Shown: positions 9,451-33,733 of the stretch, piece by piece
How the letters are laid out: each line of letters begins with the position of its first letter
How positions within the stretch are numbered: position 1 is the stretch's first letter
DNA from: Botryllus schlosseri
Lineage: Eukaryota
Direction: 5' to 3'
Length of the DNA: 64,000 bases
Assembly (NCBI GenBank): GCA_051294905.1
Contig: CM119378.1
Location: forward strand, 9,796,001-9,860,000
The notes under the pieces: model-generated
What the model was told of the DNA's origin: nothing
The model's input: the letters and a program-made list of their open reading frames with translations, nothing else
Database searches by the model: none
Program-made: the position numbers and the translations under genes

Positions 9451-9505
9451 CACAGGTAAATATTAAATACAGCGTCTGTGTGTGTATGTGTTTCTGTTGT
9501 CCCAT
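7634..9505 (-). CDS. LINE ORF2 fragment: reverse transcriptase domain and C-terminus (the first ~18 codons are flanking DNA)
   Basis: Motifs YRPISVLP, QQFGFR, FLDLKKAFDCVDH, GVPQGSVLGP, LFADDT, KYLGV; C-terminal H-x-Y-N-T-R and WNSIP...FK typical of CR1/L2-group ORF2. Confidence 0.92.
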   Translation of the reverse strand: MGQQKHIHTQTLYLIFTCDERFFNRHIKDTRKTWSGLNSLLHRKKGHKSVSEIVNSDTGNKLSDPAAIANHFNEYFCNVGPNIASSITKPVSARSEVRSISQSIVLEPTTKYEVEVAIHKLKSHKADGYDQIPSWFLKMISLHIGQYMAHFFNFMIENGVYPSYLKKARVVPVHKAGDRTNVTNYRPISVLPCIGIVFEKLLLSRLSSFLAKMSVISPQQFGFRNKHKTAHALLTVAEQYYDISEKRDVGCSIFLDLKKAFDCVDHKILISKLARYGLRGPQLELMKSYLTGRQQMVAISDTLSSPHPVTCGVPQGSVLGPVLFTLYVNDIFETSSLNTTLFADDTHLLSSASSTAELDALTGDQMPKVHEWTAQNNLCINASKSQLLTVNSKNNLTVNIAGQPVSNTDNAKYLGVLLDSNMSWKSHIQSLETKLSPKCGLFYSLKRFMPAWVLLILFKSLIQSKLHYGILCWGAASKTALKPLQKLQHKVLRIIARAPKGPGCPSNKSLLKRFGVLNIEDMRKLEIAKFMYQFHCGRCPEYFNDFFTSESKAHKYNTRASTSSKYHMIDRKDHRSIKYAGPDVWNSIPPAIRQSTSMSTFKSKYKQLLLNKYSPSSRLPDHD

Positions 9506-10536: not shown

Positions 10537-10696
10537 ATGAAACTACCTTCTCAAGTAACCGTAGTGAAGGCATTGGCGGAAAAGCCATGGGACGCCATTC
10601 TTTTGGTCACTGATCAGTTGTCCAGCCTTACGGGTGAATTGGAAATATTGAAGAGGCCTTTTGAGGCCCTAAAAGAGCTTGATGCAGCGGTTGGCA
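10537..10696 (+). pseudogene. 5' part (codons 1-53) of an M17 leucyl-aminopeptidase-family gene, interrupted by the transposon
   Basis: MKLPSQVTVV...ELDAAVG joins in frame to RDVILAKL... at 32303 once the element and one TSD copy are removed. Confidence 0.85.
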
Positions 10697-13600: not shown

Positions 13601-14280
13601 TATTCGGGTTCGGAAAAACTCAGGAACATAACAGAATCCGAATGAATTCGGTGGAATAACGCGTCCTTCAATATATAGACAAACTTGAATTTCCGACAAA
13701 CTCGACACATATACAATTGAAGAATAACCCATGTTGGGACCCTAAAGGAAGATATTCACCCCCATGAGTGGACGTAAGTACCCCTAATAAAGAATTATTC
13801 ATGCGTATTCGGGTTCGGAAGAACTCAGGAACAGAACAGAATCCGAATGAATTCGGTGGAATAACGCGTCCTTCAATATATAGACACACTTGAATTTCCG
13901 ACAAACTCGACACATATACAATTGAAGAATAACCCATGTTGGGACCCTAAAGGAAGATATTCACCCCCATGAGTGGACGTAAGTACCCCTAATAAAGAAT
14001 TATTCACGAGTATTCAGGTTCGGAAGAACTCAGGAACAGAACAGAATCCGAATGAATTCGGTGGAATAACGCGTCCTTCAATATATAGACACACTTGAAT
14101 TTCCGACAAACTCGACACATATACAATTGAAGAATAACCCATGTTGGGACCCTAACGGAAGATATTCACCCCCATCTATGGATGTAAGTACACTTATGAA
14201 AGATATATTGACAAACAATAAGCTTCGGAATAACTCAGGAACAGAACAGAATCCAATCGAATTCGGTGGAATATCCCGTT
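10697..14280 (+). repeat. Left arm: ~345-bp terminal segment plus ~16 tandem copies of a ~205-bp monomer
   Basis: AATTGAAGAATAACCCATGTTGGGACCC recurs every 205-207 bp from ~11043; two monomer types (A, B). Confidence 0.95.
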
Positions 14281-14781
14281 AGTCAATATAATAATACTTC
14301 AAGTTACTCCTACAACGTGATATGTACAATTCATTTATGTTGTTGTACATGATAACTAACCAAATTAGCGCCGGCTTTGCATCGAACACAATTTCTTTTT
14401 TAAAACAGTTCCAAGAATATATAATCTACTAGTTAGAGTATAACGAAAAGTAACGATATAGCTTGTGAAATTGTGTTTCCAAATGTATAGGTGGAGGGGG
14501 GTATATTCAGTTTATTTTCGTCTACTCCTTCGGTATAATTTACCAATGTAGATGAGCAGGCACCGTTGGTTGGATAACTAGCCAGCATTCTATCTAGGAT
14601 TTCAGAAAACTTTGAAATATAGTCGCTCTTATGATCAAGTATAGTGCGGCGCGGATGGACAAATACTCTGATCTTATCTTTTCAATTCTCTGGCCCTACT
14701 TCGGTCCAACTCTAAGGTCGGATTATTGAAATGACCGTGATCCTATCGTAAAACCCCGATATTATTCATTTACTCACACGG

Positions 14782-16389
14782 CAGTGTTGGGATCAAGTCA
14801 CTACCTTCGAGTCACGAGTCATCTCGAGTCATTGCACATTTTGACTCGAGTCAAATTAAGTCAATCGATTTTCGAAGGTGACTTGAGTCAAGTCAAATCA
14901 CTTATTTTTTGGAGGTGGCTTGAGTCGAATCAAGTCGAGTCAAGTTAAGTCACGAGTAAAGTCACAATTCAAGTCAAATGGAATTTTCGAAGTATGAGTG
15001 ATAAGTCAAAGTCATTAACATCACTCGTTGCGTGAAAGCCAGATTAATTGAATTAAATTTGATTGAATCAAACAACGAATATAAATTTAAATACCTGAGT
15101 AACCGTGTAGCTGAATGCCACAGTCTGGTAGTATCAGCAGAACTAGGCAGTGGTTCTCAACCTTTTTGTCTCCGCGGACCCCTTGGACCTGTCACAGACC
15201 CCCACGGACCCCCAAGTTTTAGATCGGATCTAGCTCGATTATCGAGTAACCGTTATCTGCCTTGTGCAAATATCGACCTTATGCTAGGGATCAAGCAACC
15301 AGAATGCTAACACTCCCAACGGATTGTCTGATAGCATGCAAGGTTATGGTTGACGAAGAGAGATTTCTAAAATATGAAATCTGAAGTTTTAAGCAGAGCA
15401 ATAACTACCAATGGCATGTACATCGCGCGAAGCGTTAACAAATTTTCAGTTCAGTGCAGCTTTGCGCCCCACTTCAGATGCTTTCACCTATCCTAGTTTG
15501 AGAACCAAAACAGATGAATGTGGAGGGTTGCAAATACTACGAAATCACCGTGATGGACCTTACTACTTCCATTTTTTATTCTTTCCCCAAACCCCCACAA
15601 AACATTTCTGAGCAGCAATATGTTTGTATCAGTAGGCTGTTGGAAATTAAATTGAGTTCGCGGTGTAGGTTATTTGATCTCCGACGGTCATTCTGATTAT
15701 GTAAGTCATGAAGTTTTGGTAGTAATAAAGTGAAACTGCCTCGTGATATCCCTAATTAGACAAAAATCCACCCTTTTGCAGATTTAGAGGTCTCGTGGAC
15801 CCCCTGCAAATGCTTCGCGGACCCCCAGGTGTCCGTAGAGCCCGGTTGAGAATCACTGAACTAGAGGATCGAATAAGAATCTGCGAGAAGTGATACAAAT
15901 TGATATTGTACAATACAATACCCATCTACACATACATGAGAATACAAACGCATCAACATATTCGTTTGAATCAAACTATACAAGAGGGTTGGTAAAGAGC
16001 AGCACCGCGCAATGTGAGCATCGAGCCGTCTGAGAAACAGAGATAGCCTACGTTGCTGTTAGATTAATCTGCTTCTACTATGACAGCGTAGGCTGTGATC
16101 ATTTCGTTTCCGGAGAATTTATTTGAGATGTAACAATGGAGGTCCAGTGAGAGGTACAAGTACAATCAGTGAATGACTGGTTGCTCTCAGGACAGTCACG
16201 AGTGACACCGGCGTATATCGAACAATCGTAACATATTTAAGATTCGGGGATTTAATCGACACTGTGTACTTGATGACTTGAAATTTACTCGTAAATTTTA
16301 CTTCGAGTCACGAGTCAATCCACATTTTTGAAAGGCCGAGTCAAGTCAAGTCATATACGAAAAGGTTGAATCGAGTCATCCCAACACTG
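14782..16389. mobile_element. hAT MITE (GAGTCAAGTC family) nested inside the giant element
   Basis: TIRs CAGTGTTGGGAT / ATCCCAACACTG; perfect 8-bp TSD TCACACGG (14774-14781, 16390-16397). Confidence 0.9.
15148..15858. mobile_element. Second hAT (Charlie-like) MITE nested in the previous one
   Basis: TIRs CAGTGGTTCTCAACC / GGTTGAGAATCACTG; imperfect CTAG-centred flanks (AACTAGG / AACTAGAG). Confidence 0.75.
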
Positions 16390-19300
16390 TCACACGGTGG
16401 TTTTGAATATTGATTGAAACAAAACAAACAGGAAATAAAAAAAAATAAAGAACAACCCCAACCCTAATCTGAAGTAGCCTAGCTATGTCAACTTGGACTT
16501 AGCATGTGGTTTATTTCTATGAATTGCTGTTCAGTGCAACTATTGATGCCAGGGCGGAAGAGGATAAGGCTGCCCTTTTCTTTGTGAAAAAGCACTGGTG
16601 TAGCTCCAATCCGGCTCCGGCAGAAATATATAAAATCCACCCGAATATACAAACCCGGCTTCGATCCGTACCTCGCTTTAGATTCCACCCACGAGCAAGC
16701 GACCAAGAAGCCGAACCCTCCACCTCTGCGCTATCTCAGGGGTAAATACAGGACGTCATACGGGGAGAGGCATATGTGAGGCACCTCGTGTGTATGGTTG
16801 GTACTTGCATGGCTGACCGGATAAGAATACCGCGTGCCGTAGGCTTTTCAAATTTTCGAACGAAGTCGTTTTTTATTGCTTTACTGAATTTTTATGATTA
16901 CCTCTGTTCTTTTGGCTCACGTACAAATATTAATTTAATAATTTTGCCGCCACTTTCAATCGTGCACTCGCGCGGAATTTGTAGTAACACATTTTCGTTT
17001 TATCGCAGTCTCGTGGTGTTTTGATATGATGAAAGTTGCAATTATATGACGATATCAGTATAATCTGGTGCTGTTTCGACCATATACATACAAGAACAGA
17101 GCGTGATACGAATATTCCTCGTTTGAATGATCCTGACAGTTACAGACTGTTCAACGTTATAGGCTAGTAATTGATCGTTTACAACATTTGACCACCACTC
17201 ACTACGCAATCGGCATATTAATTGTTCAGAAATATATAGTGAAAGAAGAGACGAGACACAGTTGAAGAACAAACGAGCCCAACATCCACCTGATTGCAGA
17301 CGAAATTGTGTTCCCGCGGTGGTGATATCATACTTTGACAGAGCGACGCGTTCTCTATTAAATTCTGCTGATCATGTGGTAATTGAACGAGAGGACGCGC
17401 GTATGTTTTTCTTCACGTGCCTTAATTCCGAAGTGTAGAAGTCGTGGGATTTTTCCGACATTGACCACGATGAAGCTGATACATATAACTAGACGATTTC
17501 TAGATTCCTCGTGTCTTTATATGTTCAGAATACCAGAGTCGTTGAGTAGCGATTCATGACAGGCCTTAGCGAGCCTAAGCAATGAAACGGAGAGCCTGAT
17601 TTTGTAGTTTTGATGGGAATAAACATGGATAGAGTATGTCGAAGCCAAAGCGACAGCGGACAGTGAGCGTCTAAGTCGGCGGAACAGTCCACATTTTTGG
17701 TAATCGTGTTTTCGCGACAGTATGTATTTCGCACAGGCCTATTTAACGTAGGAAGTATATTTATCACTGACCAAGTGACCACTGACCAGTGACCACTGAC
17801 CAGCGATGTCAATGTTCAGTTTGTCACATAATCTCGTGACCATGACGAATCATTGGGATTTACTTACATTGACACAAAGGCTGTTATGGGCCTATTGTGA
17901 ACTTGAGGCATTTATTTTGGGGTGAGGGCATTCAGCCTAAAATGCGCATTGCGCGTTCAGGCCCAATCCGCCAAAAGACACATCGTTGTCACAGCATGCT
18001 GCAATGTATTAAATACATATATATCTACTGTATTGGATGATGCTGTTATCATACTAATATCTTCCATAATATCATGCATCCGCATTTCTAACGTAATCAT
18101 AAAAACTATAGCACCGGTGCCCGTCACCAGTATCAGATGAATATTTAGCAATTCTTGGTAGGAACAAATACCTTTTGCTCTTAAGTCAGATTTTACGTAG
18201 TTTCGAATTATTTTCTTTGCCGTAAGACGAATAGTTCGCAATATTGTCCTCAAACTCTGGAGGCATGTATTCCACATGTAGTGTATAATTGTATCACGAT
18301 TACCATTTGAATATGCCGTGAGTTATAGTATTACTAACCTATACGTAGGTTAGTAATCTATAGTTATAGGCCTACAATGTCGGGCTGATGATGTTGCCGT
18401 TGAGTACTGAGTAGTTTTGTTCTCGTGGCTAAGAGTCGGATACATGGATATTCTACAGTTCATGAAACTTACGATGGAGCGACAAAATAACATCATGCTA
18501 TCTGTAACCACTACCCGTAGTCCCGTGATGTCAATGTCATCACCTCGTACTATTCCATTATAATTCGCCGTTGATACTATTCATTTTATGATCGTTAAAG
18601 ATATATCTTTCGTGTCTCTAAAGTTTAATAACAATTTATCCGACTATTCGTGGTATGACAATGCAAAACATTCCGTTAATGGAACATCAGACTTCAGCAC
18701 AAATTATTTATTATGTACTGATGGCGAGTACTGGTTGTGTAAGATCGCGATCGTAACCGTAAGTGTATTCTATATTGCATCACGTTCTGACAAGAACATG
18801 CATTTGTCTAATTAGGCGCCATATTGTCTGCCCGAGTCGCCGCGGATTTAGTTGATTCTTGTCAAGATCGCTATTTGTAGCCGGCAGCTTGTGCGTGGAT
18901 TTTCTGTTACATGCTTCTGCAATCTACATCCATCCTCCATTCGTATCTACATATTCTGATACTTGGTTGTATGTAGAAGTGATAAAACAGATCGAACGTT
19001 GTGAGGGATGATTAACCAGTTTTGCGAATCCATTGTAAGCCTTTCTGGTGGAATATATCAATACGATTTAGGAATAGCATACGCAGCCAACGCTGAATAT
19101 TACAGTTGCCATCATGAATTCAGTTACCAAACATGCTCACAGTACAATTTTCACAATATATTTTCGGCCAAACCATCAGAAAGGTGGATGGATACGGTCT
19201 TTGGTCTCCCCACGGCTTTACTCGGAAAACGCATGCTTCAACGCCGCGTTTGAGCTCGACACTGCCTTTGAATACCATGACCTGCGAAGTAGCCTACAAC

Positions 19301-20896
19301 TCGAGAGAGCGCTAAGCACGACTCCCGCCGAACTCAAAACTAGTTCCCTCGCTTCGAGTTTGCAATGCCGAATCATGCGCAATTTTGACGCAACATGAGT
19401 TTGAGCACTGAGTAAGGTTTCTTGGACATGGGTGTGTGTGTTGCAATACATTATATATAGGTTATGTATTTCTGAGCAAGCACCAACGCAGTGACGTGAT
19501 CAACTTGATCTCGGTCAACTATTGAATATTGAAGTTCATTTCAGACGCTGATTCACACGCGTATAATGTATAATGCAGGTCTCGGGCCGCAAAATAATGA
19601 CTACGCGATCCGCGAGTTGGTGACCATTATCCTAAAGCAGGGGTTCTTAATCGGTATTCACGGGCCCCTTGGGGAGCAGACTAGTTTCATGGATTCCGTG
19701 AAAGGACACTCGATTTTTGAATCCGTGAGTGAGACCACTAATCTGTAAATTGGGCATAATGATGAAGCGGTTTACTGTTGTCACTGACATGATTCTTACT
19801 TACCCTAACTTTTTTTGGGGGTGCATATTTTTTCAATATATATTGAAAAAAATTGTGGCCCATAATCGCCAGACAATTAATCGGGTCTGTAGCAGTCGCA
19901 TCCGAAAATCTCCATTTAGAGGCATTCCAGAATCAGTTCGTAAATGAACATGACGTAAAATATTCGTGAGCGGATCTATTTAACGTGAAATTTTACTTCA
20001 TTATACGCGCGATTTTGTGTCACTAGATTTCATGATGTTGATGTTGGTCCCATAAGTTCAGTCTATACTCCGTTTAATACACTCTTAGTTTATGTTTAAG
20101 AGGCCTCAGTGGAAACGGATCTCAAAGTTACTTCTGTCCCAATGTCTGCATGTCATTTCGACTGATGCGATGAGTGCACCTGCACATGTTATCGGAGACA
20201 GTAGTTGGTATTGTTCACAAAGGTGCTCCGTAACGAAGTATTTCTACATCCGAGTACTAGAATGCGTTTGGTCTACTTGCCGTACTTGCTCAAGTGAATA
20301 TGTTTTTAGACTACTTCCTCTTTTGCTTTAAAACTTTGCTAGCAAATCTAGTGACATTTTACACGTTAGATTTTGAAAAGTGCAACGTATAGTTTGGAGC
20401 AATTTTATGCGTGAAAACGTCATAAGCACCTCACAAAATACCGTTTACAGTAACTGATAAATATATTTTCAAAGATGGTACCAATTGGTAGCGAGTAGCT
20501 ACATTTGAGATTTTGCGTTAGTCGAGATTATGTATATGGCAATTTCCAAAATAGCCACTTCCGATAAAATACCACAAAAGTATGTGAATCCTAACCAATC
20601 TACTCTTTGAAGCTATTGGCTCGAGCATCTTGCAGACTATCATATTCCACTCCCATTTAAAGTAGTTTTGGAATGTCTTGGAACTCGGTACTTTTACTTG
20701 TATTTGAGAATCTACTTATGGCGTTACTTCGACGTAACTACCGACGCCGACTATACTTCTTTGAATTCATCTGATTGTTGAGCGCGCAAACGTATTCAAC
20801 TGCGAAATTAGGTATAATATATTTAATGCAATGCTACAATCATCAAGAAATATTATCCTATTAAATCGAATTTTTTGAAACTTTGAAGATCGGGAA

Positions 20897-23800
20897 GTGT
20901 GTAGAAGCATTTCAACTATTTATTTCGACAAACAGATGATTTCTGGATATTATTGCGTAGTTACAGGAGGTGGAGGCAATCATGATTCGAATATCGTAGA
21001 TTCGATTGTGCAACATTGCGTACAAAATGGTATCAATTTGATAGACAACTTTGACAATGTCAGTATGCAGACTTTTCTGTCAAAATACAAGATATGGGAA
21101 AAAGACAAAAACCGACTCTGGAGGCTTGAAGCGTTTGTTCAAAAACACAAAACGACCCTCCAAGCTAGGATATCTGAAAAACCGCAGTCGACGAGTGGTA
21201 CTGAAGAATCGCCAAGGACTTACCTCAAAAATAAACATTTGAAAGTTTCGAAACGACAGTTATATAAAATTCGGCATTTATTCCTCACAAGGGAAAAGCC
21301 ACGCGACCCTGATCCTGAAAGCTCAGACCATGACACGGGAAGGTGCTTATTTGACTTGGAGGAAGATGTATATGAAAATGAATATTTGGAATCTTCTACT
21401 TCGGAAGAAGTATTTTGTTTTTGTAAAATGCCATACAATGATGGTGACTTCATGGTACTTTGTCAAATCTGTAACTGCTGGTTCCACCCTCACTGTATCT
21501 TCGATCAGGACAGTTTAGAGGTTACTTTCGAGGATATTCAATGGGGAAGGTGCAACTTGGTCTGTGACAAGTTTAATGTAGCCGATTGCAACGACCGCGT
21601 CAATCGCTCCTGGCACACGTTCTTCCATAAAACTTCTCAAGTGTCTCCTAGCTCCGATTCTGAGACCACAATATGTTACCAAATTTCCAAGCCAGACATT
21701 TGTGATTCTCCGGAAAAAATCCCATTACCTGACGACTTGGATGTTTCACGGCAGACGCCAACGATTTCAGTTACCGAAGATTCATTCGATCCGTGCTCTG
21801 AATCAGATACTTTGGATTTTAATCAAGCGCTCCAAACAAACACCACTAACATTTCCACGGCAGAGCCTCCATCGTGCGACAACGAACCATCACTTCCATC
21901 GCAGAAGCGAAAGGCCCCAGTTGAACAATTGACATCAAGTTATTTTTGCGAAAGTGACGACGATTCATGGATAAAGCACGACACTTTAAAAAATCTCGGC
22001 AGCTTTAGCAAGGACTTGGTTTTGGCAGAGGAAGATATTAACATGACACATTCGTGGTCAATAACTACCGAGGAATGGTCTCAAATGAGTGAGGGACGAT
22101 CAAAACATCGCTTCGACAAAGGATCGCATTACTATATTGCAATGTTTCGCCACGTAAAATCAGTTTACGATAAGTGTGTGCCAGTAGTGAAGAATCACTA
22201 CCTGAAGGCGCCAAGAGTGACTCCTTTCGAAGCAAGTGACAATGACTTGTATCACGAAGGATACATAAACTTTTGCTGTGCTCACCATAATTGCTGTGAA
22301 TGCCAAGTCAGTGGGCTTATTGATATTTACAACACTCAAACAAGCGTGTTGTGCGATTTGACAATTACAGGCGTGCTTAAGCATTCCAATAATTGTGCAC
22401 GTTCACGGCCAGTTCGGGGACCCGAGAAAGAGATGTTGCAGAAACAACTTGATGGAAGATCCGCAACCAAGGTGAACCGAGAGCTAAGAGATCAGTTATC
22501 GGAAACGGAGCGAACGTTTGGCTCTCATATTAACGCTCCTAACCCTTCAGTTTTGAGACAGTTGAAAAGTAAAATCGATGAGCCTGACGACTGGACAACA
22601 GATATGTTCACCAACTTGAAATTATTGGCAGAACGATATCGTGATAGCGGGTCACATTTCATCAGACATTGGGAGGGGTTTCCTTCACCCGGAATAACAC
22701 TCTTCAGCAAACGTCAACTCCAGCTTTTTCGGGACATCTGTCGGAAAGACATGCTTTATTTCGACTCGACATCGGGGATAACAAAATCCAAATCCGGTCA
22801 GCCGATGTATCAAATTTACACTTTGCTCGTGCGCTGTCCCTATAAAGGACATGCTGGACTACCTATTGCAGCCTACATCTCGGCATCACACACCACACAC
22901 AGCATAATAACATTTCTAGGACGTTTCAAAGAAGCTCTACCGCCCAAATCTACTCCTAGAATGGTATTGATAGACGGTGCACTTGCATTATGGAATGCAA
23001 TGCTGGCCGTCTATTGTGGCGAAACCAGATTAAAATATTACGAGCGGGTCTACCGGATCGTAACGGGCACGGCTCATGAAGGTGACATGGATCTTACATT
23101 TGTCCTCAATTGTCTGAGTCATTGCATGAAAGCAGCATCGCTTATGTGTAAAAAGTATTACATCATCAAATACCGAAAGGAGGCCATGTATTGGATCAGT
23201 CTATTGTTTTTGTCCAGTACTATTGAAGAATTGGATTCCATTATTTGGAATTTGTGTGGCATCCTTCTTCCGCGCCAGAAATCTGCAGGTGTTTTATCTA
23301 GTTACAGGAGTCTGATAGAACACCAAAGCGTGAAACGAGTCTACCCTCCACCAATTGAAAACGAGGAATTCGATCCGCACGCTAACAATGGAGATTTTTT
23401 TCCAACGTGGATTCGCTTGATCGAAAGCAGGAGTTGGAGTCGCCATTTAACGCAAGATACAAAAAACTTATCTGGGAATTTAAAAACAGCAAGGAATATA
23501 AAGAAGGAAACAACGCTGACCAGTGGACAGAAAGAAATCCGTACTTCTCCGAAGATTTCCTCGACAAGCTGCAGACAATAATTTTCCCGAGACTTGGTGC
23601 CACATCAGCACTTCTCCTTGGCGATTTATCAAGGCATGCGGCTGACGTAGACGACGATTCACAGTACGCAAATACAGCAAATACTATCGTGCGATTGAAA
23701 CGCAAAGCACAAAAAAAGGCGTACAATCCATCTGCTCTGCGAATCGCACGCAAGGTATTGTGGAAGAACATTTTTTCCAGTTGAAAAATATATACTTTGC

Positions 23801-24963
23801 TACCACAGCCAAATGTTCGCTGGATAAATTTGTAGTGAAGTACGAAAAAGAAATTTCAATTTCATGCAAATTGTTCAGCGACACTATCCTGCACGAAGGT
23901 TTCAGTCGTTGCCGCTCAAAGAAACCGAAAAGAGGTGCGCTTGTGACTGAAGTGAAGGAAGCGCAAACGCCAGTCAAGGTGATTAAATCAGTTCACAAGA
24001 AACGGAAGCAAAGGGATACCGGATATTATATATCAAAACGAGCTGTAAAAGATCTGCACTGTGTCGCAATGACAAATCCAAATTCAATTTCGGAAGACGT
24101 CATCCTGCGCAGACTTGGCAATCTAAAAAACGGACGACTGGACAGCAACATTCAGCCAGCTGAATTCATCAAGGCCCAATCATTTTCAGACTCATTGTGG
24201 CAAGATTATAACCACATCCCCAAGCAATTCACCGAAATGGCGATGACCACCGCGGACGACGAAATTATTACTTGGCTTGATGTTTACTCAGTTTGTTCGG
24301 AGCCAAGTAGCGATGTTCTGGATAATATTCAGAAATGCGTCACCAATACCACCTACGGAGGTTGGCTCACATCAGAAATTGTTTCCACATACGTGCGGCA
24401 GTGCATTCGAAGGCTAAACAATCAATTTGACCATGCAATTGGTGGTTTTTCAAAAATTATTGATAATAAAGTGTTGCTGCAAGATAATTCAAGCCTCGAT
24501 TCAAATTCATCGGCACTGTCACTGGCAACCAATTTATTCGACAACAAGGGCTGCCTTTTCGACATAATTCTTCTTCCGATTTTGCATAAACAACACTTTA
24601 TGCTTCTTTGGTACACGAAAAGTACAAATGTCTGGTACTTGCTGGATTCATCCAGTATTCCAAGAGCTGGGGAGGCCCAAACGATTCAAAGGCGGCTGCG
24701 ATGGGCCATGAATCGCGCTAAATTGGCAACAACAGAGCTGAAGGAAGCAAAGTGTAAAGTGCTGAAAGTAATCCAGCAATCCGACAGCAAAAGCTGTGGT
24801 GTGTGTGTATGCCTTGCTGCGCGAGTAATTTGCACAATGGGAAGAATTGAATATGAAACAAATCAAGAAAGCTTCAGGCACTGGATATTGTACGACTTGC
24901 TGTGCTCTTCGCCCGTACTGCATCCTGATGTCAGCACGTCCCAGAAAAAATGCTTGAACGAAG
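20897..24963 (+). CDS. PHD finger + MULE (NOF-like) DDE transposase + Ulp1/C48 protease; split over three frames by two -1 junctions (~23400, ~23715)
   Basis: PHD FCFCKMPY...MVLCQICNCWFHPHC; DDE-type motifs YFDST, VLIDGA, CLSH (CxxH), LLGDLSRH, NRTQGIVEEHF; protease motifs GWLTSEIV, HF, LLDS, QQSDSKSCGV. First ATG at 20936; the true 5' end is uncertain. Confidence 0.8.
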
Positions 24964-25203
24964 GTTAGTTGTTGCCTACCACGCGTGTCGCGCATGCATA
25001 TAACTGATTGGCTATAGGTGTAGGCTACTTGAAACAAAAATACATTTTCTAAAGAACAAGCGCGTTTCAGATTACGAATTAAACTCGCGAAAAATAAATA
25101 ATGATAAAAAATATACTTGAATGAAATCCATGCCAGGGATATTCCACAATCGAAAAAAAAATTGTAATTGACCAAATTTTTTACTACTATGAATTTTTTA
25201 CAG

Positions 25204-27623
25204 TCAGAGAAACTAACCATTGCGAGGAGGCCGCATTTGCGTCCACTGCGTCTCCCAAATGCAATGGAAATATTTCATTGCAGGAGTCAGGTAACTATAA
25301 ATCGATATAATCATAAAGCCAATCATTTACCCTTATACTACCTCATTTCATTTTAAGCGACCAAACATGCAGAGACTGAGCCACCAGTCAAGTTCACAGG
25401 TATTATGATGAGTAAATATTTCGCGTTTTGTGTAGGTACAATATCCAGTTTTCTGCAATGATTGTTTAAATTTTCTGCTCTATATATACGGTAGCGCGGA
25501 GCATTTTCTCATTTTTGGCCGGAGCCGGATCAGTACTTTTTCTGACACTGCCGGAGTTGGATCGGAGCTGGTTCAGTACTCTTTACTAATAATATGACAG
25601 CCTTAACCTCTTCCTATACCTCGAATCTATAGTTAAAGTGAAACGTTCACGGAAATAAACCATATGTCTAGTTCAAGTTGACATAATTACTTCAGATAAG
25701 GGTTGGCTTTGATATTTGAGTTTTTATTTTCCTGTTTGCATTGTCTCAATCAATATTCAATGCCATCATGTGAGTAGATAATTGTTATCAGAGTTTTTCG
25801 AACCGGATCATGGTCATTTCTAGAATCTGGCCTAGAAATCGGACCAGAGCTTTAAATTACAGGATCGGACTAGGACCATGCAATTTGTTGATTCGCTCCG
25901 CACTAATATGCGGCCTCTTCTGCAGGAAGATAAAACTCCGTGTCGTAGATATGAGAGAGCATGTTGGCTACTTTGTTTCTCATATTTTACGAATTTACGA
26001 TGTATTAATTGTGATAATAAAGTAATATAGATTGACCAAATTATTGAAATTGAACTGTTTCAAATACATATATTATAAATATATATGTTTATTCACTCAG
26101 ATATCAGATTGTTGTGGTTATCACCCATCAGCAACCGAGTGGAAGCTGTTGTCGGTAACGTATGTGTAACAAGACGGAGCTTGTGCTTTCTGTCGCATCA
26201 AGGGTGGCTAGATGATCAGGTTCGTCAGACAATACAATTTATGATTTGCTCAGTTTAAAATTCAAGGAATATTGTTTACGCAGATTATGGATGCTACGAT
26301 GGAGGGATTGTGCATAAAGGTAATTTCGTTGATTTCACTACACATATATTTCTTATAAATATACTATAACTTGTAACATTCTGTTAATGGTAGGCCGGAA
26401 AAAGCGGCAGCTGTGTTTCGTGTCACTACTCGACAAAATGGTGGTACAACGGTTCCTACTGTGCCTTAAACACCGGAATGCTGGTACGAAACTATTAAAT
26501 TATTTACCTGTGGTCAGCATCTATAGTAACCAACTAATCTTACACTTTCAGTTGGAAAGGTCATCCACACAATCAATAGTGACGTCACTGTATGTTGGCA
26601 ATCACTGGATTTTCATGGTCAGTCTCATTTATTTATAATGTAACTTACATCGATTGTCCCTCTCAAACCCGTTGCACGCGGCTTAAGGGTTGATTTTCAC
26701 TTTTCCTCAATCATCCCGAATTCATTCAGGCTAGTGACATTAACACTCGAACCCTCCTACTTTACGACCCACTGGGAAATGAGGAGAGCTACGCTCAGAA
26801 ATTGGAGTTACATTGGAAGTGAGATTCTGCAATTATACTCTACAAGTAGCACAGTCAATAACGACGTAAAATATCAACCCGGTATTATAAATTTAGTGGT
26901 TTTTGGCGCCATCACAAAGAGGACTTCGCAACCCCCGGATGGACTATAACGTCTTGCTCTCATGACTCGCAAGAAGATGGCTTCAACTGTGGTGTTCTCG
27001 TGCTGAAGGTAGGCCTTGCAATCATATATATTCGAAATTTATCATTCATGTTATTTATCGGGTCTAATGTGAATTGTATATTGCTTATTATATTGCAACA
27101 AAAATTTGGTTACTTCATGCTGGCTTATCAAATAGTATCCCCGAATACTAAACCAAGTGCAATCAGGAAATGAGGTAGCCCAAGATCTCAGAGTATGGGG
27201 AGAAATATTCCGCCCACACAATCATCTGCCTTCTACTCACACCGAGCAATGACTATATTAGCGCTATCTCATACACTATGGTTTGAAAAGTGACATCTCC
27301 TGTTATATTTATACATCATCCTCAAATAAAAACATCTTTAATCGAGACGATGGTTCCCATAACACTATACGTGGTTAGGCCATGTGATTGATTGTAAATA
27401 TTATTTTATTGGACAGTTTGCAAAGAATTTATTGGGCAATGACGGCTTCAATTTTTCGGCAAAAACTGAAGATTGCAGAAGATATCGAGAAGAAATCGGA
27501 AACATGTTGCTTGAGCTAACTGGTATCCTGAAACCTCGTATTAAAATTTGTTTCATCAGAAATATGACCATATGTTTATTTTTCAACCATACAGATGAGA
27601 CAAACCTTCTCAGAAATCGATGA
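25204..27623 (+). CDS. Spliced exons encoding a second Ulp1/SENP-type (C48) cysteine protease domain
   Basis: Exons 25204-25290, 25358-25399, 26101-26219, 26284-26319, 26394-26483, 26552-26617, 26730-26818, 26897-27008, 27417-27522, 27595-27623. All introns are GT-AG and phases match. Protein contains GWLDDQIMDA, GNHW, LLYDPLG, QEDGFNCGVLVLKFA. The last exon is less certain. Confidence 0.75.
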
Positions 27624-28129
27624 AGGTAGGTACTACTATAACTGCATGGTTTTCTGTGGCTCAGCGATTCCTGACTTGGAATCTAAGGACCCTTAGGATG
27701 TCTGCGAAGCTGTATTACGGATTTATCGATACGACGAGTCCGCTTCCGAATGAGCTGTGGAGGCAACATAAACCTTCAATAAATAGACACATAGACACAT
27801 ATCCTTGATCCCGATGGTGTCAAGGCGTTAGAGGTTTATTGTGATATCGCTTCCCCCTCACATTTCATGTAAAAATATTACACTATACTTGACTTACTCC
27901 ATGACACGATCTTCTAACAACAGGTGTGGGGAAATTCGGAATTTAACTCTGCCTGCCATCTTCACATCACCACCGATTGCAAACGCTACCATGTCATGTA
28001 TGCAAGACGATCGTTTGCTCATGCGAATGCTATAAATTTATCATTATTGTTATTGCTATTACAGTGTGTTTACTAATTTCTACATTTCTTTGATAAAACG
28101 TGATTATAATGCATTTTCATTTGTTTTAT

Positions 28130-31100
28130 TTGATTTTGTTCTGTTCCCGAGCTATTCCGAACCTCAATGTTCGTGTTCTATTTGGGTACATACGTCCGCT
28201 GATAGGGCTGACTATCTTACTTTAGGGTCCCAACATGGGTAATTCTTCGATTAGGCTATATATGTATCGAGTTTGTTGGAAATTCAAGTGTATCTATGTA
28301 TTGACCGACGCGATATTCCACCGAATTCAATCGGATTCCGTTCTGTTCCTGAGTTAGTCCGAACCCGAATACTCGTCAATATTTCTTTATTAGGGGAACT
28401 TACGTCCACAGATGGGGTTGAATATCTTCCTTTAGGGTCCCAACATGGGTAATTCTTCAATTATATATGTATCGAGTTTGTCGGAAATTCAAGTGTGTCT
28501 ATGTATTGAACGACGCGATATTCCACCGAATTCAATCGGATTCTGTTCTGTTCCTGAGTTATTCCGAAGCATAATGATCGTAAATAATTCTTTATTAGGG
28601 GTACTTACGTTCACAAATGGGGTTGAATGTCTTCTTCCAGGGTCCCACCATGGGTACTTCTTCAATTATATATGTATCGATTTTGTCGGAAATTCAAGTG
28701 TATCTATGCGTTGAACGACGCGATATTCCACCGAATTCAATCGGATTCTGTTCTGTTTCTGAGTTATTCCGAAGCATAATGATCGTCAATAATTCTTTAT
28801 TGAGGGTACTTACGTCCACTGATGGGGTTGAATGTCTTCCTTTAGGGTCCCACCATGGGTACTTCTTCAATTATATATGTATCGATTTTGTCGGAAATTC
28901 AAGTGTATTTATGTATTGAACGACACGATATTCCACCGAATTCAATCGGATTCCGTTCTGTTCCTGAGTTATTCCGAACCCGAATACTCGTGAATAATTC
29001 TTTATTAGGGGTACTTACGTCCACTAATGGGGTTGAATGTCTTTCTTTAGGGTCCCACCATGGGTAATTCTTCAATTATATATGTATCGATTTTGTCGGA
29101 AATTCAAGTGTATTTATGTATTGAACGACGCGATATTCCACCGAATTCAATCGGATTCTGTTCTGTTCCTGAGTTCTTCCGAACCCGAATACGCGTGAAT
29201 AATTCTTTATTAGGGGTACTTACGTCCACTCATGGGGGTGAATATCTTCCTTTAGGGTCCCAACATGGGTTATTCTTCAATTGTATATGTGTCGAGTTTG
29301 TCGGAAATTCAAGTGTGTCTATATATTGAAGGACGCGTTATTCCACCGAATTCATTTGGATTCTGTTCTGTCCCTGAGTTATTCCGAAGCTTATTGTTTG
29401 TCAATATTTCTTTTATAAGAGTACTTACGACCACTGATGGGGTTGAATATCTTCCTTTAGGGTCCCAACATTGGTAATTCTTCGATTATATATGTATCGA
29501 GTTTGTCGGGAATTCAAGTGTATCTATGTATTGAACGACGTGATATTCCACCGAATTCGAGCGGATTCTGTTCTGTCCCTGAGTTATTCCGAAGCTTATT
29601 GTTTGTCAATATTTCTTTTATAAGAGTACTTACGACCACTGATGGGGTTGAATATCTTCCTTTAGGGTCCCAACATAGGTAATTCTTTAATTGTATATGT
29701 GTCGAGTTTGTCGGAAATTCAAGTGTGTCTATATATTGAAAGACGCGTTATTCCACCGAATTCATTCGGATTCCGTTCTGTTCCTGAGTTCTTCCGAACC
29801 CGAATACGCGTGAATAATTCTTTATTAGGGGTACTTACGTCCACTCATGGGGGTGAATATCTTCCTTTAGAGTCGCAACATGGGTTATTCTTCAATTGTA
29901 TATGTGTCGAGTTTGTCGGAAATTCAAGTGTGTCTATATATTGAAGGACGCGTTATTCCACCGAATTCATTCGGATTCTGTTCTGTTCCTGAGTTCTTCC
30001 GAACCCGAATACGCGTGAATAATTCTTTATTAGGGGTACTTACGTCCACTCATGGGGGTGAATATCTTCCTTTAGGGTCCCAACATGGGTTATTCTTCAA
30101 TTGTATATGTGTCGAGTTTGTCGGAAATTCAAGTGTGTCTATATATTGAAGGACGCGTTATTCCACCGAATTCATTCGGATTCTGTTCTGTTCCTGAGTT
30201 CTTCCGAACCCGAATACGCGTGAATAATTCTTTATTAGGGGTACTTACGTCCACTCATGGGGGTGAATATCTTCCTTTAGGGTCCCAACATGGGTTATTC
30301 TTCAATTGTATATGTGTCGAGTTTGTCGGAAATTCAAGTGTGTCTATATATTGAAGGACGCGTTATTCCACCGAATTCATTCGGATTCTGTTATGTTCCT
30401 GAGTTCTTCCGAACCCGAATACTCGTGAATAATTCTTTATTAGAGGTACTTACGTCCACTCATGGGGGTAAATATCTTCCTTTAGGGTCCCAACATGGGT
30501 TATTCTTCAATTGTATATGTGTCGAGTTTGTCGGAAATTCAAGTGTGTCTATATATTGAAGGACGCGTTATTCCACCGAATTCATTCGGATTCTGTTCTG
30601 TTCCTGAGTTCTTCCGAACCCGAATACGCGTGAATAATTCTTTATTAGGGGTACTTACGTCCACTCATGGGAGTGAGTATCTTTCTTTAGGGTCCCAACA
30701 TGGATAATTCTTCAATTATATATGTATCGATTTTGTAGGAAATTCAAGTGTGTCTATGTATTGAACGACGCGATATTCCACCGAATTCGATCGGATTCTG
30801 TTCTGTCCCTGAGTTATTCCGAAGCTTATTGTTTGTCAATATTTCTTTTATAAGAGTACTTACGACCACTGATGGGGGTAAATATCTTCCTTTAGGGTCC
30901 CAACATGGGTTATTCTTCAATTGTATATGTGTCGAGTTTGTCGGAAATTCAAGTGTGTCTATATATTGAAGGACGCGTTATTCCACCGAATTCATTCGGA
31001 TTCTGTTATGTTCCTGAGTTCTTCCGAACCCGAATACTCGTGAATAATTCTTTATTAGAGGTACTTACGTCCACTCATGGGGGTAAATATCTTCCTTTAG

Positions 31101-32298
31101 GGTCCCAACATGGGTTATTCTTCAATTGTATATGTGTCGAGTTTGTCGGAAATTCAAGTGTGTCTATATATTGAAGGACGCGTTATTCCACCGAATTCAT
31201 TCGGATTCTGTTCTGTTTCTGAGTTCTTCCGAACCCGAATACTCGTGAATAATTCTTTACTAGGGGTACTTACGTCCAATCATTGGGGTGAATATCTTCC
31301 TTTAGGGTCCCAACATGGGTTATTCTTCAATTATATATGTATCGATTTTGTAGGAAATTCCAGCGTGTGTCTATGTATTGAACGACGCGATATTCCACCG
31401 AATTCATTCGGATTCTGTTCTGTTCCTGAGTTATTCCGAAGCTTATTGTTTGTCAATATATCTTTCATAAGGGTACTTACGTCCATAGATGGGGGTGAAT
31501 ATCTTCCTTTAGGGTCCCAACATGGGTTATTCTTCGATTGTATATGTGTCGAGTTTGTCGGAAATTCAAGTGTGTCTATATATTGAAGGACGCGTTATTC
31601 CACCAAATTCATTCGGATTCTGTTCTGTTCCTGAGTTCTTCCGAACCCGAATACTCGTGAATAATTCTTTATTAGGGGTACTTACGTCCACTCATTGGGG
31701 TGAATATCTTCCTTTAGGGTCCCAACATGGGTTATTCTTCAATTATATATGTATCGATTTTGTAGGAAATTCCAGCGTGTGTCCATGTATTGAACGACGC
31801 GATATTCCACCGAATTCATTCGGATTCTGTTCTGTTCCTGAGTTATTCCGAAGCTTATTGTTTGTCAATATATCTTTCATAAGGGTACTTACGTCCATAG
31901 ATGGGGTTGAATATCTTCCTTTAGGGTCCCAACATGGGTATTTCTTCAATTATATATGTATCGAGTATGTCGGAAATTCAAGTGTGTCTATGTATTGAAC
32001 AAAGGGACATTTCATCGTATTGGTTGTGATTCTGGTCTGTTCCTATTCCTGAGTTATTTCAAACCATTTTTATTTCAAATCTGTTTTACAGTTGGGTACC
32101 TGTATCTACTGATTGTGTCGCATTCATGATCAGATATCCCGATAACCTGTTACAAAAAACTATTGTCAAATCTGGCAAGCGGTTTTCGGGATTCTGTTAG
32201 AAATTCCAAACTTAAAAATCTAATGATGCCCCTGATGTTTTTTGTGTTTCACCTGAACATATATAATTCCTGAGAATTCTATTAGAATCACAGTGGTC
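28130..32298 (-). repeat. Right arm: ~19 inverted copies of the ~205-bp monomer plus terminal segment
   Basis: Reverse complement of the left-arm monomer; innermost units (28130-29060) are more diverged. Confidence 0.95.
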
Positions 32299-33733
32299 TG
32301 GCAGAGATGTGATTTTAGCAAAGTTGGAGACCCAGACGAAGCGGGTTATATGGTCCCCAACAGGGCCGATCAATCGTGATTACGATGACGTCAGAAGGTT
32401 TAGTGATGCCGGAGAAAAGGGAATCAAGAGAGCCATCAAGGCAGGCTGCAAATCAGTTCTTGTAGTGACCCCCAATACCAAATTGTATGGGCAAGCTGCA
32501 ATTGTTGCAGCTTTGGGTGTTTTGCAAGGAGCGTATGTCCCTATTGAAATCCGCGAGGACTGCCCCGACAGAAGATTCAAGCTGGATAAGATTGGTCTGT
32601 ATGGCAAAGAATTGCCAGACAGTTTCCTCGATACGGTGAAAGCTCTGGAACATGGTCGATCAATCACTAGAGATATCGGTGGATCGGATCCGGAAAGAAT
32701 GGCTGCTCCGAAAGTTGCAAAGTACGTAGAGAATACCTTCAGGGACACTTCCGTCAAGGTATCAGTAATCTCGGACGTCAATGTTTTGGAGAAGGAGTAC
32801 CCATGTCTTGGAGCTGTAAATCGTGCTGCAAAAGTTGTTCCCAGGCACAATGCGCGTGTGATCAAGCTGAATTATTGTGGCGAAGGTCCAATTACCGATA
32901 CTCTGTTCCTTGTCGGTAAAGGAGTCACTTATGATACTGGCGGTGCCGACATTAAAGCCGGCGGCGTTATGGCTGGAATGCATCGGGATAAATGCGGAGC
33001 TGCGGCAGTAGCTGGATTCTTTGGTGTTTTGGATGCTTTACAGCCAAAACATCTCAAAGTCGTGGGTACTATGTCCATGGTGAGGAATAGCGTGGGGTCA
33101 GATTGCTATGTTGCTGATGAAATAATCACTTCCCGTGCCGGTGTAAGAGTTCGTGTTGGTAACACGGATGCAGAAGGGAGAATGGCCATGTTGGAATGTC
33201 TATGCGAGGCTAAAGAACAGGCCCTGAACGAGGTCAATCCGCACCTTTATACAATCGCAACATTGACTGGACATGCGATTATCGCCATGGGACCAAATTA
33301 CTTCTGTGCTTTGGACAATGGGCCCGCAAGGAAGATCAAGAACGTGCAGCAAATTCAAGATTCTGGTGATCAATTCGGCGATCCTTGCGAGATATCCACT
33401 ATCCGTCGTGACGATTTCGAATTCCATACCGGAAAGTCAGAGTATGAAGATGTGCTTCAATCCAACAATTCACCTTCGTCGAGGACGCCACGTGGTCACC
33501 AATGTCCGAGTGCGTTCATGATAATGGCTTCGGGGTTGGACAAAGTAAGTAAATGAGATGGAGTGGATTCTTGTCAATTTCTAACTAACTTATATTAACA
33601 GCACGGCATCGATTCTGCGCAACCTCTGCAGTACACCCACTTGGATGTAGCTGGGTCGAGCGGGCCATTCCCGGGCGTACCCACAGGATCGCCGGTGGTG
33701 GCTCTTGCTGCTCGTTACATCAAAAATTTGTAA
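32299..33733 (+). pseudogene. 3' part of the M17 leucyl-aminopeptidase-family gene (similar in type to C. elegans W07G4.4); coding 32303-33544 and 33602-33733
   Basis: Metal-binding motifs GKGVTYDTGG, MHRDKCG, NTDAEGR; intron GTAAGT...AACAG (33545-33601); last exon HGIDS...HLDVAGS...YIKNL*; AATAAA at ~33798. No stops or frameshifts seen. Confidence 0.88.

What the first reader, a model, noticed from the sequence alone, without database searches (positions are those of the whole stretch)
24960..27623. A second, intron-rich SUMO-protease domain appears to be spliced onto the transposase-Ulp1 ORF
Seen: the stop codon of the long ORF (TAG 24966-24968) lies inside a donor site G|GTTAGT. Splicing 24963 to 25204 and through nine further GT-AG exons keeps phase throughout. 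It yields a complete second C48 domain with WLDD, catalytic His (NHW), Asp (YDP) and Gln/Cys (QEDGFNCG). The first protease domain is intronless, whereas the second is cut by short introns, so the two probably have different origins. Inference: the ~1,600-aa product has two deSUMOylase-like domains, and retention of the first intron would give a one-protease isoform. SUMO-dependent silencing is established for transposons in animals, so these domains could be counter-defence modules; that function is untested.
Basis: partly seen in the sequence, partly recalled or inferred. Interest (0 to 1): 0.85.

Follow-up and report, generated by a model that had tools for sequence, protein, structure and literature searches.

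The report
Transposon gene with swapped-in second protease
A 21.6-kb foldback-type DNA transposon carries, after its transposase and first SUMO-protease-like domain, a second intact SUMO-protease-like domain split into short exons; the splice signals suggest the two are joined into one protein, but no transcript evidence is available.

Summary
TAG 24966-68 lies inside a strong donor (AAG|GTTAGT). Exons 4-11 encode a 214-aa domain with the C48 order and spacing: His, Asp 17 residues later, and Gln six residues before Cys.

The context changes the picture in three ways.
- Both protease domains lie inside one 21.6-kb element. Its 3.6-kb inverted ends are built of 205-bp tandem repeats. Removing it restores a 470-aa host aminopeptidase reading frame, so the whole unit transposed together.
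- The long ORF is in three frames, with two one-base shifts at 7-nt homopolymers.
- The few relatives known carry PHD, transposase, an Ulp1-like domain and then a USP deubiquitinase in one ORF. Here the ORF stops where their USP begins.

The intron-rich C48 module therefore replaces the USP, probably through capture of part of a spliced gene. Donor strength, exon-2 quality, exon/intron GC contrast, matching phase and the absence of a start codon in exons 2-3 favour splicing onto the transposase ORF (about 0.55). There is no transcript evidence. The source of the second domain was not found, and the counter-defence idea is untested. This is a new variant of a known kind.

The parts
10699..32298 (+). 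Whole foldback-type DNA transposon, about 21.6 kb. The end coordinates are uncertain by 1-3 nt.
   Evidence: The ends are inverted repeats of 3.6 kb at 92% identity. Removing 10699-32305 restores a 470-aa host ORF.
10692..10698 (.). Left copy of the target-site duplication, TGGCAGA. It extends to GGT[T/CT]GGCAGA.
32299..32305 (.). Right copy of the target-site duplication, TGGCAGA.
10699..14297 (+). Left terminal inverted repeat: about 300 bp of unique end followed by a 205-bp tandem array (10996-14273, 16 copies).
28125..32298 (-). Right terminal inverted repeat: a 205-bp tandem array (28184-32044, 18.8 copies) followed by the unique end.
20936..23394 (+). Transposase ORF, first frame, counted from the first ATG. 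It holds a PHD finger at about 21416-21505, the candidate first Asp 22763-65 (YFDST), the candidate second Asp 22973-75 (LIDG) and a CxxH motif (LNCLSH).
   Evidence: It aligns with P0002, P0034 and P0035 at 33-36% identity.
23395..23717 (+). Transposase ORF, second frame. It is entered at the T7 run 23395-23401 and left at the A7 run 23711-23717.
   Evidence: P0009, P0013, P0002, P0019, P0034 and P0035 align through both shifts without gaps.
23718..24963 (+). Transposase ORF, third frame. It holds the conserved NRTQGIVEEHF motif (candidate catalytic Glu 23763-65), then protease domain 1 (about 24210-24963) with His 24594-96, Asp 24645-47, Gln 24777-79 and Cys 24795-97.
24964..25203 (+). Proposed intron 1. 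The donor is AAG|GTTAGT, with the ORF's stop TAG at 24966-68. GC is 32.5%. An AATAAA lies at 25093.
25204..25290 (+). Exon 2, 87 nt, phase 1 to 1, with no in-frame ATG. Its acceptor is strong and its donor matches 8 of 9 consensus positions. GC is 48%.
25358..25399 (+). Exon 3, 42 nt, phase 1 to 1. It is weaker, with an AAG acceptor and a donor matching 6 of 9 positions. GC is 52%.
26101..26219 (+). Exon 4, the start of the second C48 domain, ending in GWLDDQ. An alternative in-frame ATG lies at 26085-87, after a stop at 26076-78.
26284..26319 (+). Exon 5.
26394..26483 (+). Exon 6, a variable insert region. It adds nothing to the profile score.
26552..26617 (+). Exon 7, carrying the catalytic His (26603-05).
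26730..26818 (+). Exon 8, carrying the catalytic Asp (26766-68).
26897..27008 (+). Exon 9, carrying the oxyanion Gln (26970-72) and the catalytic Cys (26988-90).
27417..27522 (+). Exon 10, the C-terminal helices of the domain.
27595..27623 (+). Exon 11 with stop TGA 27621-23. An AATAAA lies at 27778. Intron 10 (72 nt) is also open in frame.

Best explanation
The window holds one copy of a rare family of giant foldback-type cut-and-paste DNA transposons. The family's gene encodes a PHD finger, a DDE transposase and a divergent Ulp1/SENP-like protease (domain 1). In all relatives found that extend past domain 1, except P0016, a USP-type deubiquitinase follows it.

In this lineage the USP was lost at its first residues. 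A piece of an intron-containing gene now sits in its place: two small linker exons plus a complete C48 catalytic domain in eight exons. The transposase ORF ends on a strong splice donor in phase 1. Exons 2 and 3 and the C48 exons all continue that phase.

The most likely product is therefore a spliced mRNA encoding transposase, Ulp1-like domain 1 and C48 domain 2. An intron-1-retaining mRNA would end after domain 1.

Shown:
- the anatomy, phases and splice signals;
- the C48 nature of both domains;
- that the module lies inside a unit that transposed as a whole;
- the USP at that position in relatives.

Inferred:
- the splice join itself;
- the capture origin;
- any enzymatic specificity or role. 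The role may be removal of SUMO, ubiquitin or similar marks from silencing, repair or transposase-associated proteins.
For: - Splice path and phases were verified.
- The E1 donor matches 8 of 9 consensus positions. Such sites occur about once per 3.2 kb, and this one overlaps the ORF's stop.
- An exon as good as E2 is rare in shuffles, at 0.9%.
- E2 and E3 have exon-like GC (48% and 52%). I1, I2 and I3 have intron-like GC (27-36%). The homology-supported exons and introns show the same pattern.
- I2 is 67 nt, matching the 64-112-nt introns of the C48 module.
- E2 and E3 are open only in the frame that links E1 to E4, and have no in-frame ATG.
- Relatives P0001, P0002, P0004, P0005, P0012 and P0035 continue from domain 1 straight into a USP in one ORF. 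In P0034 (locus L003) the USP is also present, but a stop splits it between two called genes. The window's ORF ends at that junction.
- P0016 shows two C48 domains in one ORF.
- The second domain fits the C48 profile and catalytic geometry.
- The module lies between the inverted arrays, inside an insertion whose removal restores a host ORF.
Against: - There is no transcript evidence of any kind. The genome's proteins are not in the searched collections.
- An in-frame ATG at 26085 could start a stand-alone 220-aa protease the size of SENP8.
- An AATAAA at 25093 could end a short mRNA after domain 1.
- Phase match between E1 and E4 alone has a one-in-three chance.
- E3 has a weak acceptor and a weak donor.
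- The splice statistics use thresholds chosen after the fact.
- As assembled, this copy's upstream ORF is frameshifted twice, so it may make no full-length protein.
- No relative with the same C48 module was found, so conservation cannot be tested.
Confidence: 0.55

Rival explanations
1. The C48 module is a separate gene nested in the transposon. It would be transcribed from its own promoter in the 24969-26100 interval and translated from ATG 26085 as a catalytic-domain-only protease of about 220 aa. It would not be spliced to the transposase ORF.
For: - ATG 26085-87 is in frame with exon 4, directly after a stop at 26076-78.
- Exons 4-11 cover the whole catalytic domain.
- AATAAA at 25093 could terminate the transposase mRNA.
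- Catalytic-domain-only C48 enzymes exist, such as SENP8/NEDP1 at 212 aa in the PDB list.
Against: - The ATG has a poor context, with T at -3 and T at +4.
- It lies 15 nt upstream of a good polypyrimidine/CAG acceptor, which looks like that of an internal exon.
- This model leaves unexplained the strong donor on the ORF's stop, and the well-formed, open, GC-rich exons 2 and 3 in the linking frame.
Confidence: 0.17
2. The C48 exons are a passively carried gene fragment, a transduplicate of the Pack-MULE kind. They would have no protein function in the element and would be either unexpressed or non-coding. Their intactness would only reflect the youth of the copy.
For: - The insertion is young. 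The interrupted host ORF is still fully open on both sides, so intact exons are weak evidence of selection.
- No other copy or relative with this module was found.
- The upstream ORF carries two frameshifts.
- Capture of gene fragments by DNA transposons is common (PMC11417382).
Against: - All eight domain exons, all splice sites and all four catalytic residues are intact.
- The fragment sits exactly where the family's second protease domain normally lies, in the sense orientation, in phase and behind a strong donor.
- A random capture would meet these conditions rarely.
Confidence: 0.23
3. The C48 exons belong to a host gene that merely lies next to a shorter transposon, or the arrangement is an assembly chimera.
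For: An intron-rich structure is typical of host genes. Homopolymer frameshifts hint at imperfect consensus quality.
Against: - The exons lie between the two inverted 205-bp arrays.
- Removing the whole 10699-32305 unit restores a continuous 470-aa aminopeptidase ORF flanked by a direct repeat.
- Relatives L003 and L004 have the same layout of an array followed by the gene.
Confidence: 0.03

Closest known systems
Transposases fused to Ulp1 (C48) domains: Mutator-like elements of plants (KI-MULEs), hydra and lancelet, and Ginger1 elements (PMC2836005)
   Same: A C48 Ulp1-like catalytic domain lies C-terminal to a DDE transposase in the same reading frame. A PHD finger is sometimes present too, as in Ginger1-9_HM and hydra MuDR. 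The function in transposition is unknown.
   Different: Here there are two ubiquitin-like-protein protease modules after the transposase. Ginger1 carries either OTU or Ulp1, never both (PMC2836005). The transposase matches no Pfam transposase model. The second module is split by ten introns and would need splicing.
Foldback-like elements: Drosophila FB, Galileo (P superfamily), Tm1 and Phantom (Mutator superfamily), FARE (PMC3169594, PMC3573991)
   Same: Very long terminal inverted repeats built largely of tandem repeats surround an internal transposase gene. The 7-bp exact direct repeat at the insertion resembles the short TSDs of such elements.
   Different: The repeat unit (205 bp) and the arrays (3.3-3.9 kb) are much larger, and the element is 21.6 kb. 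The transposase is not recognisably P or MULE by sequence. By fold its weak best matches are ISCth4/IS256, Hermes, Transib, RAG1 and the P element. It also carries protease modules.
Transposons carrying USP/UCH (C19) or OTU deubiquitinase domains: a Trichomonas transposase_11+C19 protein, and Helentron OTU and UCH (PMC2836005, PMC11417382)
   Same: Relatives of this element (P0002, P0034, P0035, P0004, P0005) carry a UCH/USP domain in the transposase polyprotein.
   Different: In those relatives the USP follows an Ulp1-like domain in the same ORF. I did not find that dual arrangement described in the papers searched. In the window the USP is replaced by a C48 domain.
SENP/Ulp1 family proteases (SENP1, SENP2, SENP5, SENP8/NEDP1, yeast Ulp1)
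   Same: Both domains have the His, Asp, Gln and Cys order. The His-Asp spacing is 17 and the Gln-Cys spacing is 6, as in the SENP2 alignment. The domain-1 model superposes on SENP2 and Ulp1 with TM 0.67-0.74.
   Different: Both are highly divergent, at 15-18% identity for domain 1. Domain 1 alone falls below the Pfam threshold (13.7 bits against 20.7). Substrate preference among SUMO, NEDD8 and ubiquitin cannot be read from the sequence.

Membership tests
Peptidase_C48 (Ulp1/SENP), second domain, exons 4-11 | Catalytic His, Asp and Cys in that order, with the oxyanion Gln shortly before Cys | tested here: met
   The residues are His99, Asp116, Gln158 and Cys164 of the 214-aa spliced domain. 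The His-Asp spacing is 17 and the Gln-Cys spacing is 6, the same as in the SENP2 alignment.
Peptidase_C48 (Ulp1/SENP), second domain, exons 4-11 | Significant full-length profile match to the family | tested here: met
   The test is indirect. The profile of the domain-1 family (A2) hits SENP2, SENP1 and Ulp1 at E 2e-14 to 4e-10. It scores the spliced domain at 20.5 bits over profile positions 52-231. None of 2000 shuffles exceeded 7.5 bits. Removing exon 4, 5, 7, 8, 9 or 10 lowers the score.
Peptidase_C48 (Ulp1/SENP), second domain, exons 4-11 | Score above the Pfam PF02902 gathering threshold | not testable with these tools
Single exons (22-39 aa) give no hit in Pfam or PDB.
Peptidase_C48 (Ulp1/SENP), second domain, exons 4-11 | Ulp1 fold and cleavage of SUMO, NEDD8 or ubiquitin | not testable with these tools
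   No structure prediction was possible without a reference. Activity needs a bench assay.
Peptidase_C48 (Ulp1/SENP), first domain, 24210-24963 | Profile match, catalytic residues and fold | tested here: met
   On its own the domain is below the Pfam threshold (E 0.058, 13.7 bits). However, 8 of 17 family members hit PF02902 and the family profile hits SENP2 at 2e-14. The AF2 model (pLDDT 83) matches SENP2 and Ulp1 by Foldseek at E 1.6e-8, TM 0.67-0.74. His, Asp, Gln and Cys are conserved.
Spliced fusion gene (transposase plus C48 module) | Canonical GT-AG sites and an unbroken phase across all junctions | tested here: met
Spliced fusion gene (transposase plus C48 module) | Transcripts that contain the junctions | not testable with these tools
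   No RNA data were available. No protein at least 50% identical to the window's ORF exists in the 15-billion-protein collection.
Spliced fusion gene (transposase plus C48 module) | An intact upstream reading frame in this copy | tested here: not met
   There are two one-base frame changes at 7-nt homopolymers, at 23395-23401 and 23711-23717. Homologs read through both. These may be assembly errors.
Foldback-like DNA transposon | Long terminal inverted repeats made of tandem repeats, flanked by a target-site duplication | tested here: met
   The 3.6-kb arms are 92% identical, with 205-bp arrays. The direct repeat TGGCAGA flanks the element, and its removal restores a host ORF. Relatives L003 and L004 have 176- and 186-bp arrays.
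Mutator (MULE) or P superfamily transposase | Match to the MULE or P-element transposase models; TSD of 9-11 bp (Mutator) or 7-8 bp (P) | tested here: inconclusive
   No Pfam transposase model hits the window ORF or P0002, P0034 or P0035. The profile finds nothing relevant in the PDB. A low-confidence model (pLDDT 61) weakly matches ISCth4, Hermes, Transib, RAG1 and the P element at TM 0.2-0.3. The TSD is 7 bp exact, or 10-11 bp with one indel. The DDE and CxxH motifs were read by eye.

The most novel reading that the evidence does not exclude
A previously undescribed superfamily-level group of giant foldback transposons of marine eukaryotes encodes transposases with two ubiquitin-like-protein protease modules in series. 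The second module is exchangeable. Here a USP has been swapped for a spliced C48 domain taken from a cellular gene. The proteases act to remove SUMO or ubiquitin marks that the host lays down to silence or restrain the element, and alternative splicing sets the one-protease to two-protease ratio.
Probability: 0.15. Interest if true: 0.8.

Novelty: new variant of a known kind. Interest (0 to 1): 0.55.

Why it matters
Transposases fused to Ulp1, OTU or USP proteases have been catalogued for about twenty years, with no known function. Three features make this element a useful test case.
- The family places two such proteases in series after the transposase.
- The second position tolerates a swap from USP to C48, which suggests what matters is removal of ubiquitin-like modifiers in general, not one enzyme.
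- This copy is a very recent insertion into an otherwise intact host gene, so the element may still be active and open to experiment.

If the splice is real, it would also be a clear animal-type example of a transposon gaining a domain by exon capture. SUMO is required for piRNA-guided chromatin silencing in flies (bioRxiv 10.1101/533091; PMC10363806), and plant Mutator-like VANDAL elements encode anti-silencing proteins (PMC5735166). A counter-silencing role is therefore a reasonable hypothesis, but nothing here tests it.

Tried and rejected
- Pfam and PDB searches with single exons gave no hits because the exons are too short.
- A word-indexed search with the 894-aa ORF found nothing, because full-length relatives exceed the length window.
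- Aligning the exon pieces to P0016 to make a staggered alignment failed, because MAFFT scattered the pieces.
- A profile of the domain-1 family plus correctly placed exon pieces (A5) returned only P0020, so the source of the second domain stays unknown.
- An exact look-up of ten window ORFs showed that none is in the collection, so no public gene model could be consulted.
- I looked for a USP remnant inside the element and found none. The hit at 39960-40034 (-) is a canonical Cys box outside the element, most likely a host USP exon.
- I considered introns as the cause of the two frame changes at 23.4 and 23.7 kb. I rejected this because homologs align through them without gaps. A 26-nt GT-AG 'mini-intron' at 23755-23780 would restore the frame but is implausibly short, and the homology places the shift upstream of it.
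- I considered the Zisupton/KDZ, CACTA and Ginger families. None is supported by any Pfam hit.
- The spliced 214-aa protein was never typed into a tool. As a result, a direct Pfam, PDB or AlphaFold test of domain 2 was left out.
Full report
**Observation**

The ORF 23760-24968 ends ...CLNEG-stop. The last G of its final full codon context is the first base of a split codon, followed by GTTAGT. TAG 24966-68 therefore occupies intron positions +3 to +5.

Joining 24963 to the exons below gives 1980 nt with one terminal stop:
- 25204-25290
- 25358-25399
- 26101-26219
- 26284-26319
- 26394-26483
- 26552-26617
- 26730-26818
- 26897-27008
- 27417-27522
- 27595-27623

Every intron is GT..AG. Exons 2 and 3 are 87 and 42 nt, so a direct join of exon 1 to exon 4 is also in frame.

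**Is the second domain C48?**

Single exons are too short to hit Pfam or PDB. The spliced protein has no reference, so I analysed it only in scripts.

An exhaustive profile-free search with the 402-aa ORF found only 30 relatives among 1.8 billion representatives. The best was 37% identical. An alignment of 17 of their Ulp1-like regions (A2) gave three results:
- It hits SENP2, SENP1, SENP5, SENP8 and yeast Ulp1 in the PDB at E 2e-14 to 2e-9.
- 8 of the 17 members pass a Pfam C48 scan at E<0.01.
- The AlphaFold model of the window's first domain (pLDDT 83) matches SENP2 and Ulp1 by Foldseek at E 1.6e-8, TM 0.67-0.74.

The first domain is weak on its own in Pfam (E 0.058), but it is a genuine divergent C48 domain.

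The same profile scores the spliced second domain at 20.5 bits across its whole length, with His, Asp, Gln and Cys in the catalytic columns. None of 2000 shuffles exceeded 7.5 bits. Deleting exon 4, 5, 7, 8, 9 or 10 each lowers the score. Both domains share the spacing His-17-Asp and Gln-6-Cys seen in SENP2.

The two domains have no detectable pairwise similarity. This agrees with separate origins.

**What the locus is**

Two arrays of a 205-bp tandem repeat lie in inverted orientation at 10996-14273 and 28184-32044. Together with about 300 bp of unique sequence outside them, they form 3.6-kb inverted ends that are 92% identical, from about 10692 to about 32303.

A 56-codon ORF starting at ATG 10537 runs into the left end. 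A 415-codon Peptidase_M17 ORF (E 1e-51) starts just beyond the right end. Removing 10699-32305 joins them into one uninterrupted 470-aa reading frame. The heptamer TGGCAGA is present at both junctions.

The 21.6-kb unit is therefore a transposon insertion into a host aminopeptidase coding sequence. Both protease domains lie inside it. Because the host frame is still open on both sides, the insertion is probably recent.

**The upstream ORF**

The 'long ORF' occupies three frames: 20897-23581, then 23407-23784, then 23760-24968. Six homologous proteins align through both switches without losing residues. The switches fall at a T7 run (23395-23401) and an A7 run (23711-23717). These are one-base homopolymer length changes, not introns. 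They may be consensus errors of the assembly or very young mutations. As assembled, this copy cannot make the full protein.

**Relatives**

The full-length relatives are:
- P0002: 2074 aa, one ORF on a Tara metagenome scaffold.
- P0034: 1735 aa.
- P0035: 1905 aa.

They share the PHD finger, the conserved DDE-type core (YFD[SA]T, [LM]IDG, NC.SH, NRTQGI[IV]E.HF) and the Ulp1-like domain. P0034 and P0035 sit next to 176-bp and 186-bp tandem arrays of more than 5 kb. The array-rich architecture is therefore a family trait.

No Pfam transposase model matches the core. A low-confidence structure model weakly resembles ISCth4 (IS256), Hermes, Transib, RAG1 and P-element transposases. The superfamily remains open. 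Mutator/Foldback or P-like are the nearest candidates (PMC3169594).

In P0001, P0002, P0004, P0005, P0012 and P0035 the Ulp1-like domain runs directly into a UCH/USP domain, with Pfam E down to 5e-25. P0034's locus has the USP too, but a stop splits it between two called genes. The window's ORF ends within a few residues of where their USP Cys box begins. No USP remnant lies inside the element.

The intron-rich C48 module thus stands in the slot of the family's second protease. P0016, another relative, has two intact C48 domains in one ORF.

**Is the module spliced to the ORF?**

No RNA data could be consulted. No close relative or gene model of this locus exists in the collections. The indirect evidence favours the join:
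- On the + strand of the window only 20 GT sites match the donor consensus at 8 of 9 positions or better. Two of them are the E1 donor at 24964 and the E2 donor at 25291. That is roughly a 0.2% chance of such a site falling on a given stop codon.
- An open, phase-1-to-1 exon with an acceptor and donor as good as those of E2 appears in 0.9% of dinucleotide shuffles of the interval, and in 4 of 112 comparable blocks of the window.
- GC content alternates along the whole path as it does in the homology-supported part. E2 is 48% and E3 52%, against I1 32%, I2 27% and I3 36%. Exons 4-9 are 41-51%; the last two exons fall to 38%. Introns 4-10 are 24-40%.
- I2 is 67 nt, like the 64-112-nt introns of the C48 module.
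- E2 and E3 are open in the linking frame but contain no in-frame ATG, so if they are exons the frame must come from upstream.

Against the join:
- E3's sites are weak.
- The thresholds were chosen after seeing the data.
- ATG 26085 could start a stand-alone protease of about 220 aa.
- AATAAA at 25093 could end a short mRNA.

I put the fusion at about 0.55, an independent nested gene at about 0.17 and an inert captured fragment at about 0.23.

**Origin of the module**

The short uniform introns, the internal-exon-type acceptor of exon 4 and the exon/intron GC contrast point to capture of the 3' part of a spliced cellular or other mobile gene. A search with a profile that included the exon pieces found nothing new, and the relatives' loci hold nothing similar. 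The source is unknown. Intron 3 (701 nt) contains a 230-bp dispersed repeat that is also present at 16390-16623.

**Comparison with what is known, and verdict**

Fusions of Ulp1 with a transposase are well documented in Mutator-like and Ginger1 elements. OTU and USP/UCH domains occur in Helitron-like elements and some other transposons (PMC2836005, PMC11417382). Ginger1 carries one protease or the other, never both.

Two protease modules in series, and the replacement of the second by a spliced C48 domain, were not described in the papers I could search. I rate this a new variant of a known kind.

The protein is plausible but unproven, and this copy is frameshifted. SUMO specificity is not established. 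The counter-defence role is a reasonable but untested hypothesis (SUMO-dependent piRNA silencing: bioRxiv 10.1101/533091; transposon anti-silencing proteins: PMC5735166).

Noticed in passing
window 10537-10698 and 32306-33556 (+): An intronless Peptidase_M17 (leucyl-aminopeptidase-like) ORF of 470 aa is split by the 21.6-kb transposon. Both halves are still fully open, so the insertion looks recent and may be polymorphic.
   Followed up: yes
window 23395-23401 and 23711-23717: Both frame changes in the transposase ORF sit at 7-nt homopolymers (T7 and A7). That pattern fits consensus errors in long-read assemblies as well as it fits real slippage mutations.
   Followed up: partly
window 35925-36134 (-) and 39960-40034 (-): A canonical USP His-box region (GHY..F....WF.CND...) and a canonical USP Cys box ([12 protein letters not shown]) lie 4 kb apart on the minus strand. 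This is most likely an intron-containing host USP gene, unrelated to the element.
   Followed up: partly
window 7634-9505 (-): A 623-aa ORF with a reverse transcriptase domain (RVT_1, E 7e-35), presumably from a non-LTR retrotransposon.
   Followed up: no
window 41396-41513: An interstitial telomere-like (TAACCC)n / (CCTAA)n tract. Relative locus L004 begins with (GGTTAG)n at a contig end.
   Followed up: no
window 14782-14998 and 43524-43730; 14842-14936 and 43585-43677: A dispersed repeat of about 217 bp (83% identity), containing a 37-bp tandem motif, occurs both inside and outside the element.
   Followed up: no
window 14298-20896: About 6.6 kb lies between the left array and the transposase ORF. 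It has no long ORF and no match to the relatives' N-terminal regions. Its content was not resolved; it could hold promoter, further exons or nested repeats.
   Followed up: partly
L003 1-5641 and L004 3221-8520: Relatives of the element in ENA long-contig assemblies carry 176-bp and 186-bp tandem arrays (32 and 28.5 copies). They sit at contig ends, which suggests these arrays break assemblies.
   Followed up: partly
L002 364-2259 (P0016): A 631-aa ORF from a Logan contig has two tandem, intact C48 domains that are 60% identical to each other. Within the fetched set, it is the closest match to the window's second domain.
   Followed up: partly
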